Source of the DNA: Octopus bimaculoides
Lineage: Eukaryota
Length of the DNA: 64,000 nt
Direction: 5' to 3'
NCBI RefSeq assembly: GCF_001194135.2
Contig: NC_068985.1
Location: 5,495,239 to 5,559,238 of the forward strand
In this document: positions 5,177 to 5,460 of the stretch, piece by piece
Layout of the letters: every line of letters starts with the position of its first letter
How positions within the stretch are numbered: position 1 is the first letter of the stretch
Position numbers and translations under genes: made by a program
The notes under the pieces: model-generated
Database searches by the model: none
What the model was told of the DNA's origin: nothing
What the model saw: the letters and a program-made list of their open reading frames with translations, nothing else

Positions 5177-5460
5177 TTCTATATTTAAGAGATGAGGAAT
5201 TATGTGCATTATTTACATTATTTACATTTGACGGATATTTGTCGTCATCTTGTTTGTTGTTAACACACCGTTTCGGCTGATATATTCTCCAGCCTTCATC
5301 AGGTGTCTTGGGGAAATTTCGAACCTGGGATCTCATTCCTAAGGTATTTTTCGATATTATTATTATTATTATTATTATTAATATTCAGGTCACTGGTTGG
5401 AATCGAACTCGGAATCTTGGGGTTAATAGCACGCGCTCTTAACCACTACACCATATACCC
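5177..5460 (-). mobile_element. Family E: tRNA-headed SINE with (AAT)n linker and hammerhead motif (5262-5307)
   Basis: Minus strand: TGGTGTAGTGG A-box, GAGTTCGATTCC B-box, (AAT)n, GACAC CTGATGA A GGCTG..CAGCC GAAAC GGT GTGTT; homologous to 11.4-11.8 and 31.3-31.8 kb. Confidence 0.85.

What the first reader, a model, noticed from the sequence alone, without database searches (positions are those of the whole stretch)
5177..5460. tRNA-headed SINE that carries a Penelope-type hammerhead ribozyme (family E)
Seen: consensus from five full or partial copies is tRNA-like head (A-box TGGYRTAGTGG, B-box GAGTTCGATTCC) - (AAT)n - spacer - GACAC CUGAUGA A GGCUG[10 nt]CAGCC GAAAC GUU/GUC GUGUU - about 90 nt AT-rich end, with no poly(A) and no clear TSD. 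Stem I is 5 bp, stem II 5 bp, stem III is the palindrome AACGUU. Each copy has 1-2 private lesions (GGU for GUU at 5.27 kb; CAGAU in stem II at 11.69 kb; CUAAUGA and CAGAUGA at 31.46 and 31.73 kb) but the consensus core is canonical. Established: an extra nt after A9 occurs in active natural HHRs, and a palindromic stem III is typical of dimeric PLE HHRs. Inference: a Pol III SINE mobilised by PLE machinery instead of a LINE, whose transcript could self-cleave to set a defined end or release a tRNA-like RNA. Pol III/HHR repeats are known in schistosomes; I cannot confirm prior description in cephalopods.
Basis: partly seen in the sequence, partly recalled or inferred. Interest (0 to 1): 0.9.

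Follow-up and report, generated by a model that had tools for sequence, protein, structure and literature searches.

The report
Octopus SINE carrying Penelope-type hammerhead
A 300-base mobile element, probably from an octopus genome, joins a tRNA-like promoter head to a tail holding a minimal hammerhead-ribozyme motif typical of Penelope-like retrotransposons and inserts much as those elements do, so it is probably a SINE that borrows Penelope machinery; all five copies here are mutated relics.

Summary
Five copies lie at three loci: one solo full copy (5165-5465, minus strand) and two head-to-head inverted pairs (11415-11802 and 31320-31825). All share one layout: tRNA-like head with A and B boxes, (AAT)n, 46-nt spacer, 46-nt hammerhead-like motif, about 100-nt AT-rich tail, no poly(A). 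Every copy has a lesion in the core or stem II. The majority consensus is a canonical type I minimal hammerhead, which random sequence of this composition almost never gives. It also has the three extra hallmarks published for Penelope-like-element (PLE) min-HHRs.

New here:
- The 11 kb pair is bounded by one exact 13-bp target-site duplication, so head and ribozyme module moved as one unit.
- Both pairs show the inverted, 5'-truncated twin structure described for PLE insertions.
- A second, sequence-unrelated repeat family in the window has the same ribozyme architecture with different stems.

Not supported: no copy end lies at the predicted cleavage site and there are no direct tandems, so self-cleavage did not set the ends of the transposed copies. 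No PLE partner could be examined, because no octopus genome was reachable with these tools.

Verdict: a probable PLE-dependent tRNA SINE, a new variant of a known kind (Sm-alpha SINE-like elements, PLE min-HHRs, retrozymes). Moderate interest.

The parts
5165..5465 (-). Solo full-length copy (c5k): head, (AAT)n, spacer, HHR, tail
   Evidence: no TSD of 7 bp or more found
5388..5465 (-). tRNA-like head. A box 5443-5453 (TGGTGTAGTGG), B box 5399-5410 (GAGTTCGATTCC)
   Evidence: The box spacing is canonical. ARAGORN finds only a degenerate cloverleaf at 70% threshold. Rfam tRNA gives no hit
5354..5387 (-). Internal (AAT)n microsatellite joining head and 3' module. About 10 units here, 15-17 in c11k+ and c31k+, and 2-4 in the inverted arms
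5308..5353 (-). 46-nt spacer, the best conserved block (CGAAAAATACCTTAGGAATGAGAnCCCAGGTTCGAAATTTCCCCAA)
5262..5307 (-). Hammerhead-like motif. Helix I 5' strand 5303-5307; CUGAUGA 5296-5302; extra A 5295; helix II hairpin 5275-5294; GAAA 5271-5274; C15.2 G16.2 5269-5270; lesion G at 16.1 (5268); U17 5267; predicted cleavage between 5267 and 5266; helix I 3' strand 5262-5266
5165..5261 (-). AT-rich 3' tail ending ...GAACTGTACTGATGG. No poly(A) and no TTTT on the sense strand
11389..11401 (+). Left copy of the 13-bp target-site duplication TTTTTGTTGAGGC
   Evidence: (the only two occurrences in the window; 0 of 100 shuffles give two)
11402..11414 (.). 13-nt filler between the TSD and the inverted arm
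   Evidence: no significant match to the element
11415..11520 (-). Inverted arm c11k(-). It is 5'-truncated at the B box and 3'-truncated inside helix II of the HHR, and it crosses the head-(AAT)n-module junction
11521..11802 (+). Direct arm c11k(+). It is 5'-truncated in the head (CTACTAACC...) and has a full 3' end. HHR 11661-11706, with two substitutions in helix II
11803..11831 (+). 29-nt extension between the consensus 3' end and the TSD. With the preceding bases it holds an 11-nt exact match to the head (TATGGTGTAGT), plus a 16-nt stretch like the element's own tail
   Evidence: p<0.0005; p about 0.02
11832..11844 (+). Right copy of the 13-bp TSD
31320..31533 (-). Arm c31k(-). It is 5'-truncated inside (AAT)n and has a full 3' end. 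HHR 31423-31468 (G5 to A)
31541..31825 (+). Arm c31k(+). It has a full head, and homology stops about 55 nt after the HHR. HHR 31725-31770 (U4 to A; GUC at the cleavage site)

Best explanation
Family E is a non-autonomous retroposon about 300 nt long. Its 5' end is a degenerate tRNA-derived head carrying the internal Pol III promoter (A and B boxes). [quoted passage not shown]

The most likely life cycle runs as follows:
1. Pol III transcribes from the head through the whole unit to the first T-run in the flank (inferred).
2. The PLE-derived 3' module lets a PLE reverse transcriptase/endonuclease copy the uncleaved RNA into a staggered break (inferred).
3. Both DNA ends often prime, giving two inverted arms whose truncated 5' ends meet in the middle, inside one target-site duplication (architecture shown; enzyme inferred).

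The composite probably arose when a PLE 3' fragment inserted into the (AAT)n tail of an ordinary tRNA SINE. The same window shows the same kind of juxtaposition for another HHR-like module (inferred).

The hammerhead lacks a helix III of its own and could cleave only as a dimer. It did not define the ends of the transposed copies, so it is most likely carried as part of the PLE recognition module or as a hitch-hiker. All five copies here are inactivated relics about 4-12% diverged from their consensus.
For: - Unit structure and copies.
- The consensus passes a strict HHR descriptor. Random expectation is 0.01 per window for stems of at least 4 bp, and 0 in 44 Mb for at least 5 bp.
- RNAalifold independently predicts helix I (5 bp) and helix II (6 bp), with both core strands unpaired.
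- 97.5% of cells are paired, against 27-57% when the partners are slid.
- The consensus shows three of the features that Cervera and de la Pena list as hallmarks of metazoan PLE min-HHRs beyond their descriptor. These are an unpaired nt between A9 and 10.1, G10.1-C11.1, and palindromic 15.2-16.2 with no loop 3. It also has the short helix I of 4-5 bp that they describe for the Schistosoma families. They also report 'dual min-HHRs 100-700 bp apart on opposite strands' (PMC4209133).
- Head and module are one mobile unit. A single exact 13-bp TSD, unique in the window, bounds both 11 kb arms, and each arm crosses the junction.
- An inverted 5'-truncated twin occurs at 2 of 3 loci, and a 29-nt extension precedes the TSD. 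These match the PLE insertion structure described in PMC8557442.
- TTTT is absent from the sense strand in 5 of 5 copies and present on the antisense strand in 5 of 5. T-runs lie 14-64 nt downstream.
- A second, sequence-unrelated family (F) has the same core layout with different, still complementary stems.
- At 32.6-33.0 kb, F sits at the microsatellite tail of a tRNA/CORE-type SINE.
- Penelope elements are reported as abundant and recently active in Octopus vulgaris (PMC13282606).
- A translated copy matches an Octopus bimaculoides UniRef entry.
Against: - No PLE ORF or pseudo-LTR is in the window, and no octopus genome was reachable, so tail homology to a partner is untested.
- There are only five copies. 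Within the family there is no covariation.
- Every copy carries a core or stem lesion.
- Rfam hammerhead and tRNA models give no hit even at E up to 10.
- Only one of three loci has a detectable TSD.
- Overlapping inverted arms could also come from LINE twin priming, and LINE RT fragments are in the window.
- The two arms of a pair are no more alike than copies at different loci.
- Published PLE min-HHRs cleave poorly in vitro (PMC4209133).
- The family F consensus has U at the essential position 6.
Confidence: 0.55

Rival explanations
1. It is an ordinary LINE-dependent tRNA SINE. The 3' module comes from a LINE 3' UTR, or is a SINE body of unknown origin. The hammerhead-like motif is either inherited from that LINE or fortuitous. 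The inverted pairs are twin-priming products of LINE target-primed reverse transcription.
For: - LINE RT fragments lie in the window at 7656-8099 and 46990-47391.
- Some LINEs and SINEs are reported to carry hammerhead or HDV-like ribozymes (PMC6765202).
- In each pair one arm has the full 3' end and the other is 3'-truncated, which is the twin-priming topology.
- Rfam does not recognise the motif.
Against: - No LINE in the window shares the tail.
- There is no A-rich or microsatellite 3' end.
- The arms overlap by about 140-190 nt, at 2 of 3 loci, which is unusual for twin priming of a 300-nt SINE.
- The motif has the PLE-specific extras, namely the bulged nt, G10.1-C11.1 and the ACGU palindrome. 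It is also far beyond chance.
Confidence: 0.2
2. It is a non-LTR retrozyme. Tandem units are transcribed, the hammerheads cut out unit-length RNA that is circularised, and rolling-circle reverse transcription spreads the element. The tRNA-like head is incidental.
For: - Metazoan retrozymes are AT-rich units of about 300 bp with type I HHRs, thought to depend on PLEs (PMC7229834; preprint 10.64898/2026.07.22.740005).
- After the tail of c11k(+) there is an 11-nt exact match to the start of the head, as if copying ran past unit length.
Against: - No direct tandem occurs at any of the three loci.
- None of the ten copy ends lies at the cleavage site.
- Two copies begin at the head and not at GUGUU.
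- The tail-to-head match is seen in one copy only.
Confidence: 0.08
3. There is no composite unit. A tRNA SINE with an (AAT)n tail and a separate PLE-derived HHR module that targets (AAT)n have repeatedly landed next to each other.
For: - PLEs show a microsatellite insertion bias (PMC8557442).
- Family F sits at the (TA)n tail of another SINE at 32.6-33.0 kb.
Against: - The junction (AAT)n-ATCGAAAAATACC is the same in all five copies.
- There is no head-only copy in the window.
- Both arms of the TSD-bounded 11 kb insertion contain head, (AAT)n and module.
Confidence: 0.05

Closest known systems
Minimal type I hammerheads of Penelope-like elements (Cervera and de la Pena 2014, PMC4209133; Lunse et al. 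2017, not readable here)
   Same: - CUGANGA...GAAA core.
- Helix I of 4-5 bp.
- Unpaired nt between A9 and 10.1.
- G10.1-C11.1.
- Palindromic 15.2-16.2 with no loop 3, so probably dimer-dependent.
- Mostly dispersed single motifs.
- Pairs on opposite strands a few hundred bp apart.
   Different: - Here the motif sits behind a tRNA-like Pol III head and not in the pseudo-LTR of an RT-encoding element.
- Helix II is 5-6 bp, against the 7-8 bp reported for the Schistosoma families.
- No PLE context could be shown.
Sm-alpha / Sj-alpha SINE-like retroposons of Schistosoma (Ferbeyre 1998; Laha 2000; summarised in PMC6765202)
   Same: A short non-autonomous unit that combines a Pol III promoter with a type I hammerhead.
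   Different: - Sm-alpha has a canonical, active HHR and often sits in tandem arrays, where cleavage frees monomers.
- The octopus element has a minimal HHR without helix III, no tandems in the window and no copy end at the cleavage site.
- Sequence relatedness was not tested.
Metazoan non-LTR retrozymes (Cervera and de la Pena 2020, PMC7229834; Li, Clavereau and Pollet 2026 preprint)
   Same: AT-rich, non-coding units of about 300 nt with a type I HHR, proposed to be mobilised by PLEs.
   Different: - Retrozymes are defined by tandem repeats and circRNA intermediates.
- This family is dispersed, headed by a tRNA-like promoter, and delimited at head and tail and not at the cleavage site.
Classical tRNA-derived SINEs of octopus (OR1, OR2, OK; Ohshima and Okada 1994, cited) and the abundant tRNA/CORE-type SINE in this window
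   Same: tRNA-like head with A and B boxes, short length, high copy number, association with microsatellites.
   Different: - Those end in a microsatellite tail directly after the body (alignment A5).
- Family E continues past the microsatellite into an HHR-bearing module and shows inverted-twin insertions.

Membership tests
Hammerhead ribozyme, type I, PLE min-HHR class | Conserved core C3-A9 (CUGANGA), G12 A13 A14, A15.1-U16.1, H17 | tested here: met
   Met by the majority consensus only. Each of the five copies has at least one lesion: U16.1G; two helix II changes; C3U; U4A; G5A.
Hammerhead ribozyme, type I, PLE min-HHR class | Helices I and II flank the core in type I order | tested here: met
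   RNAalifold predicts helix I of 5 bp and helix II of 6 bp, with the core unpaired. 97.5% of cells are paired, against 27-57% when slid. There are no compensatory changes within the family. Family F has different but complementary stems.
Hammerhead ribozyme, type I, PLE min-HHR class | Unpaired nt between A9 and 10.1; G10.1-C11.1; palindromic 15.2-16.2 without loop 3 | tested here: met
   Consensus CUGAUGA-A-G...C-GAAA-CG-UU. The criteria are from PMC4209133.
Hammerhead ribozyme, type I, PLE min-HHR class | Recognised by curated covariance models (Rfam Hammerhead families) | tested here: not met
   No hit at gathering score, nor at E up to 10 around any copy. I do not know whether Rfam 15 holds a model trained on PLE min-HHRs.
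Hammerhead ribozyme, type I, PLE min-HHR class | Self-cleavage at H17, as monomer or dimer | not testable with these tools
   This needs in vitro transcription of the consensus monomer and dimer.
Hammerhead ribozyme, type I, PLE min-HHR class | Located in the pseudo-LTR of an RT/GIY-YIG element | not testable with these tools
   No PLE was seen in the window. Pfam was run on only 10 selected ORFs. No repeat beyond the five copies shares the module. No octopus genome was reachable.
tRNA-derived SINE (SINE2) | Head with internal Pol III A and B boxes at tRNA spacing | tested here: met
   A box TGGYRTAGTGG and B box GAGTTCGATTCC, 43 nt apart start to start.
tRNA-derived SINE (SINE2) | Head demonstrably homologous to a tRNA (cloverleaf) | tested here: inconclusive
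   ARAGORN finds nothing at default or 85% thresholds, and degenerate, mutually inconsistent cloverleaves at 70%. The Rfam tRNA model gives no hit.
tRNA-derived SINE (SINE2) | Short, non-coding, dispersed, flanked by target-site duplications | tested here: met
   Three loci in 55 kb of called sequence. One exact 13-bp TSD and none detectable at the other two loci. One more copy is seen as a spurious O. bimaculoides ORF.
tRNA-derived SINE (SINE2) | Transcribable by Pol III along its whole length (no internal TTTT) | tested here: met
   No TTTT on the sense strand in 5 of 5 copies; TTTT is present on the antisense strand in 5 of 5. This is weak evidence on its own. My rough estimate from base composition, not computed by a tool, is that a sense strand of this length lacks TTTT by chance about 7-10% of the time.
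tRNA-derived SINE (SINE2) | 3' end shared with its autonomous partner | not testable with these tools
   No partner sequence was available.
PLE-type insertion | Inverted 5'-truncated copy immediately adjacent to the 5' end | tested here: met
   Seen at 2 of 3 loci. The definition is from PMC8557442.
PLE-type insertion | Partial direct tandem (pseudo-LTR) | tested here: not met
   No direct tandem at any locus. There is only an 11-nt head-like stretch after the tail of c11k(+).
PLE-type insertion | [quoted passage not shown] | tested here: inconclusive
   At the one locus with a TSD there is a 29-nt extension at the 3' side and a 13-nt filler at the other side.
Non-LTR retrozyme | Tandem repeats with one HHR per unit; unit ends at the cleavage site; circRNA | tested here: not met
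   No tandems, and none of the ten copy ends lies at the cleavage site. circRNA is not testable here.

The most novel reading that the evidence does not exclude
This could be the first SINE family shown to ride on Penelope-like elements instead of LINEs. A Pol III tRNA head would have been fused, through a microsatellite that a PLE fragment targeted, to a PLE pseudo-LTR module containing a minimal hammerhead.

If such families are common, they would explain part of the thousands of 'orphan' min-HHRs in animal genomes. They might also account for part of the very large 'unclassified SINE' fraction of octopus genomes. And they would give a small natural substrate for dissecting PLE reverse transcription and what its hammerhead is for.
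Probability: 0.4. Interest if true: 0.7.

Novelty: new variant of a known kind. Interest (0 to 1): 0.55.

Why it matters
PLEs are the least understood major class of retrotransposons. The role of their conserved hammerheads is unknown, and no small, naturally trans-mobilised substrate has been characterised.

A 300-nt Pol III-driven element that carries the PLE hammerhead module and reproduces the PLE insertion signature would be such a substrate. It would show that PLEs, like LINEs, support SINEs.

It also bears on the make-up of octopus genomes. SINEs are reported at about 12% of the O. vulgaris genome, and nearly all of the recently active SINE families there are unclassified (PMC13282606).

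The copy ends seen here argue that cleavage is not what delimits the transposed RNA. That is a useful constraint on models of hammerhead function in PLEs.

Tried and rejected
- Rfam at gathering score on the whole window, and at E up to 10 around each locus. No hammerhead or tRNA hit. The microRNA hits at 11.4-11.6 kb only reflect the long inverted repeat.
- ARAGORN at default settings found nothing. Relaxed runs gave inconsistent cloverleaves.
- Attempts to get more copies all failed:
  - Two metagenome scans, one genome-contig scan and one viral scan gave zero hits or only chance 20-mer matches.
  - Searching the translated SINE reading frame gave one O. bimaculoides UniRef entry, whose contig is not on record.
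  - A LINE RT fragment from the window found nothing closer than 69% identity, so the collections hold essentially no octopus genome.
- A TSD search at the 5 kb and 31 kb loci found nothing above chance.
- I tested whether the arms of a pair are more alike than copies at different loci. They are not (89% against 84-92%), so this is uninformative.
- I tested whether the tail generally ends in a copy of the head. This holds only for c11k(+).
- The flanks of the 5 kb copy show no hidden inverted arm.
- The whole-element fold is no more stable than shuffles (z = -0.6).
- RNAcofold of the dimer gives a trivial extended duplex and says nothing about the active fold.
- The long (AAT)n arrays at 56.9-57.1 kb and 57.9-58.0 kb are unrelated microsatellites.
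- Literature searches for a hammerhead-bearing SINE, retrozyme or PLE-dependent SINE in cephalopods found none. Lunse 2017, Ferbeyre 1998 and Albertin 2015 are not held.

Full report
**What is there.**
The element lies on the minus strand. blastn of the region against the window, a MAFFT alignment and an nhmmer profile recover exactly five copies at three loci and no others:
- c5k(-) 5165-5465, a solo full copy;
- c11k(-) 11415-11520 abutting c11k(+) 11521-11802;
- c31k(-) 31320-31533 next to c31k(+) 31541-31825.

Pairwise identity is 84-92%, and Jukes-Cantor distance to the small-sample consensus is 0.04-0.12.

The shared layout, with coordinates for c5k, is:
- a 78-nt head with A box TGGTGTAGTGG (5443-5453) and B box GAGTTCGATTCC (5399-5410) at tRNA spacing;
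- (AAT)n (5354-5387);
- a very well conserved 46-nt spacer (5308-5353);
- a 46-nt hammerhead-like motif (5262-5307);
- an AT-rich tail of about 100 nt ending ...GAACTGTACTGATGG (5165-5261).

There is no poly(A). A translated copy matches one UniRef entry from Octopus bimaculoides at 82% identity. That single hit is the only basis here for calling the host an octopus.

**Is the hammerhead real?**
The four full motifs align without gaps. Their consensus is GACAC CUGAUGA A GGCUGG-loop-(U)CAGCC GAAA CG U U GUGUU. This is type I order, with:
- helix I of 5 bp;
- helix II of 5-6 bp;
- an extra A after A9;
- G10.1-C11.1;
- only A15.1 C15.2 G16.2 U16.1 in place of helix III.

That last stretch is a palindrome, which can pair only with a second molecule.

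RNAalifold, given no hint, predicts exactly helices I and II and leaves both core strands unpaired. 97.5% of cells pair, against 27-57% when the partners are slid.

A strict descriptor hits the consensus but no single copy.

In 400 composition-matched random windows the descriptor gives 0.01 hit per window with stems of at least 4 bp. It gives none in 44 Mb with stems of at least 5 bp. For a 300-nt consensus, chance is therefore about 5 in 100,000.

There is no covariation within the family, as expected for young copies decaying neutrally. Rfam's hammerhead models do not see the motif even at E up to 10. I record this as a failed membership test for those models, not for the class.

**Which kind of hammerhead?**
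[quoted passage not shown] For their Schistosoma families they also describe a short helix I of 4-5 bp with an ill-defined loop 1. All of these are present here.

They also report that most such motifs are dispersed singles, and that 'dual min-HHRs' occur 100-700 bp apart on opposite strands. The 11 kb and 31 kb pairs have exactly that appearance.

These were that an extra nt after A9 occurs in natural HHRs, and that a palindromic helix III goes with dimeric PLE HHRs.

**A second family.**
A relaxed descriptor allowing one lesion has a random expectation of 0.08 hit per window. It returns three family E copies and one unrelated motif at 32715-32751(-): TCTTT CUGUUGA A GAGC GUA GCUC GAAACGUU AAAGA.

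This motif belongs to a 150-180-bp repeat, here called family F, with five copies in the window. Its consensus keeps the extra A, G10.1-C11.1, GAAACGUU and complementary helices, but every stem base differs from family E. That is the between-family compensatory pattern expected of a real structure.

One caveat applies. Position 6 is U in four of five family F copies, so that family's core is not canonical.

**Head and module move as one.**
The 13-mer TTTTTGTTGAGGC occurs only twice in the window, at 11389-11401 and 11832-11844. These positions exactly bracket the 11 kb pair, and no shuffle gives two occurrences.

Inside this single target-site duplication both arms contain part of the head, the (AAT)n run and the module. 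The junction (AAT)n-ATCGAAAAATACC is the same in all five copies, and there is no head-only copy in the window. This rules out repeated chance juxtaposition.

**How it inserted.**
In each pair the arms are head to head. One arm has the complete 3' end (c11k+, c31k-). The other is 3'-truncated (c11k- inside helix II; c31k+ about 55 nt after the motif). The 5' ends meet in the middle, and the arms overlap by about 140-190 nt of element sequence.

At the 11 kb locus a 29-nt extension separates the consensus 3' end from the TSD, and a 13-nt filler sits at the other side. The extension region contains an 11-nt exact match to the head (p<0.0005) and a stretch resembling the element's own tail (p about 0.02), which suggests template switching.

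Craig et al. [quoted passage not shown]

Two of three loci showing the inverted twin is hard to reconcile with independent insertions. It is unusual for LINE twin priming of a 300-nt SINE, though I cannot exclude that.

The partial direct tandem typical of PLEs is not seen.

**Transcription.**
The A and B boxes are intact or nearly so in the copies that retain them. No copy has TTTT on the sense strand, all have it on the antisense strand, and T-runs follow 14-64 nt downstream. This fits Pol III read-through of the whole unit but does not prove it.

The head is too degenerate for ARAGORN or the Rfam tRNA model. 'tRNA-like' therefore rests on the boxes, their spacing and a partial T arm.

**What the ribozyme does not do.**
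Cleavage would fall between 5267 and 5266 in c5k. None of the ten copy ends lies at that site. The three complete 3' ends run about 100 nt past it, two copies start at the head, and there are no direct tandems.

The retrotransposed RNA was therefore uncleaved and was not a retrozyme-type unit-length monomer. Published min-HHRs are inactive as monomers and weak as dimers in vitro.

The most economical reading is that the motif travels as part of the PLE-derived 3' module, either as a recognition structure or as a hitch-hiker. Craig et al. raise the possibility that HHRs 'simply parasitize PLEs'.

**Origin.**
At 32.6-33.0 kb family F sits directly after the body of a complete tRNA/CORE-type SINE, where that SINE's relatives carry their (TA/TG)n tail. 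A T8 run lies between them, and (AT)n follows family F.

This is the same kind of juxtaposition as head-(AAT)n-module in family E. It makes a plausible model for how family E arose: a PLE 3' fragment landed in the microsatellite tail of a SINE, and read-through produced a new mobile chimera. This is inference.

**Context and novelty.**
- Penelope elements are reported as abundant and recently active in Octopus vulgaris. SINEs make up 11.6% of that genome, with 893 recently active unclassified families and a SINE/LINE burst at JC 0.065 (PMC13282606). A partner is therefore available, and the age fits.
- The giant squid genome paper lists 235 Rfam Hammerhead_1 hits without further analysis.
- I found no paper describing a hammerhead-bearing SINE, a retrozyme or a PLE-dependent SINE in cephalopods. 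Repbase and some key papers could not be consulted.
- Close analogues exist: the Sm-alpha/Sj-alpha SINE-like elements (Pol III promoter plus canonical HHR), dispersed PLE min-HHRs, and non-LTR retrozymes proposed to depend on PLEs.

I therefore rate this a new variant of a known kind. It is of moderate interest and rests on five dead copies, with one decisive comparison (tail against PLE pseudo-LTR) that these tools could not make.

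Noticed in passing
32715-32751 (-); other copies 1323-1359 (+), 2887-2922 (-), 30042-30077 (-), 54264-54298 (+): A second, sequence-unrelated repeat family of 150-180 bp ('F') carries a hammerhead-like motif with the same architecture as family E: extra A after A9, G10.1-C11.1, GAAACGUU, and helix I of 4-5 bp. 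Its stems are entirely different, and position 6 of the core is U in 4 of 5 copies. The copies are followed by (TA)n-type microsatellites.
   Followed up: partly
32600-32975 (-): A complete tRNA/CORE-type SINE body (32802-32966) is followed by a T8 run, then the family F module, then (AT)n. The module appears to have inserted where this SINE's relatives carry their (TA/TG)n tail. This parallels the head-(AAT)n-module layout of family E.
   Followed up: partly
17699-17856, 19834-19993, 35653-35804, 45370-45518, 52042-52154, 3319-3487 and others: An abundant SINE of about 180 nt: tRNA-like head plus a conserved body ending GGTAGACGGAAACTGAAAGAAGCCCGTCG, followed by a (TA/TG)n tail. It has at least nine copies or fragments in the window and is probably one of the major octopus tRNA-CORE SINEs.
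   Followed up: partly
11179-11361, 5506-5685, 10579-10960, 20736-21087, 51407-51815, 43882-44047, 40598-40754, 48904-49060: Another highly repeated short element containing GTTAGCACGCCGGRCRARATGCTTAGC, with about 14 copies. It lies within about 30-40 bp of both the 5 kb and the 11 kb family E insertions.
   Followed up: no
7656-8099 (+) and 46990-47391 (+): LINE reverse-transcriptase fragments (Pfam RVT_1). The closest protein in the large collection is only 69% identical, which shows that the collections hold essentially no octopus genome.
   Followed up: partly
11415-11650 and 31320-31760: The head-to-head pairs form long, nearly perfect hairpins, which Rfam scores as microRNA-like. If transcribed they would give double-stranded RNA, a possible substrate for the heavy A-to-I editing known in cephalopods.
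   Followed up: no
56863-57128 (+) and 57948-58042 (-): Two long (AAT)n arrays in opposite orientation about 800 bp apart, with no family E sequence next to them. (AAT)n is a common microsatellite in this genome.
   Followed up: yes
whole window: 8849 N in 24 runs and very many (TA)n, (CA)n, (TATG)n tracts. This looks like a gapped draft assembly.
   Followed up: no
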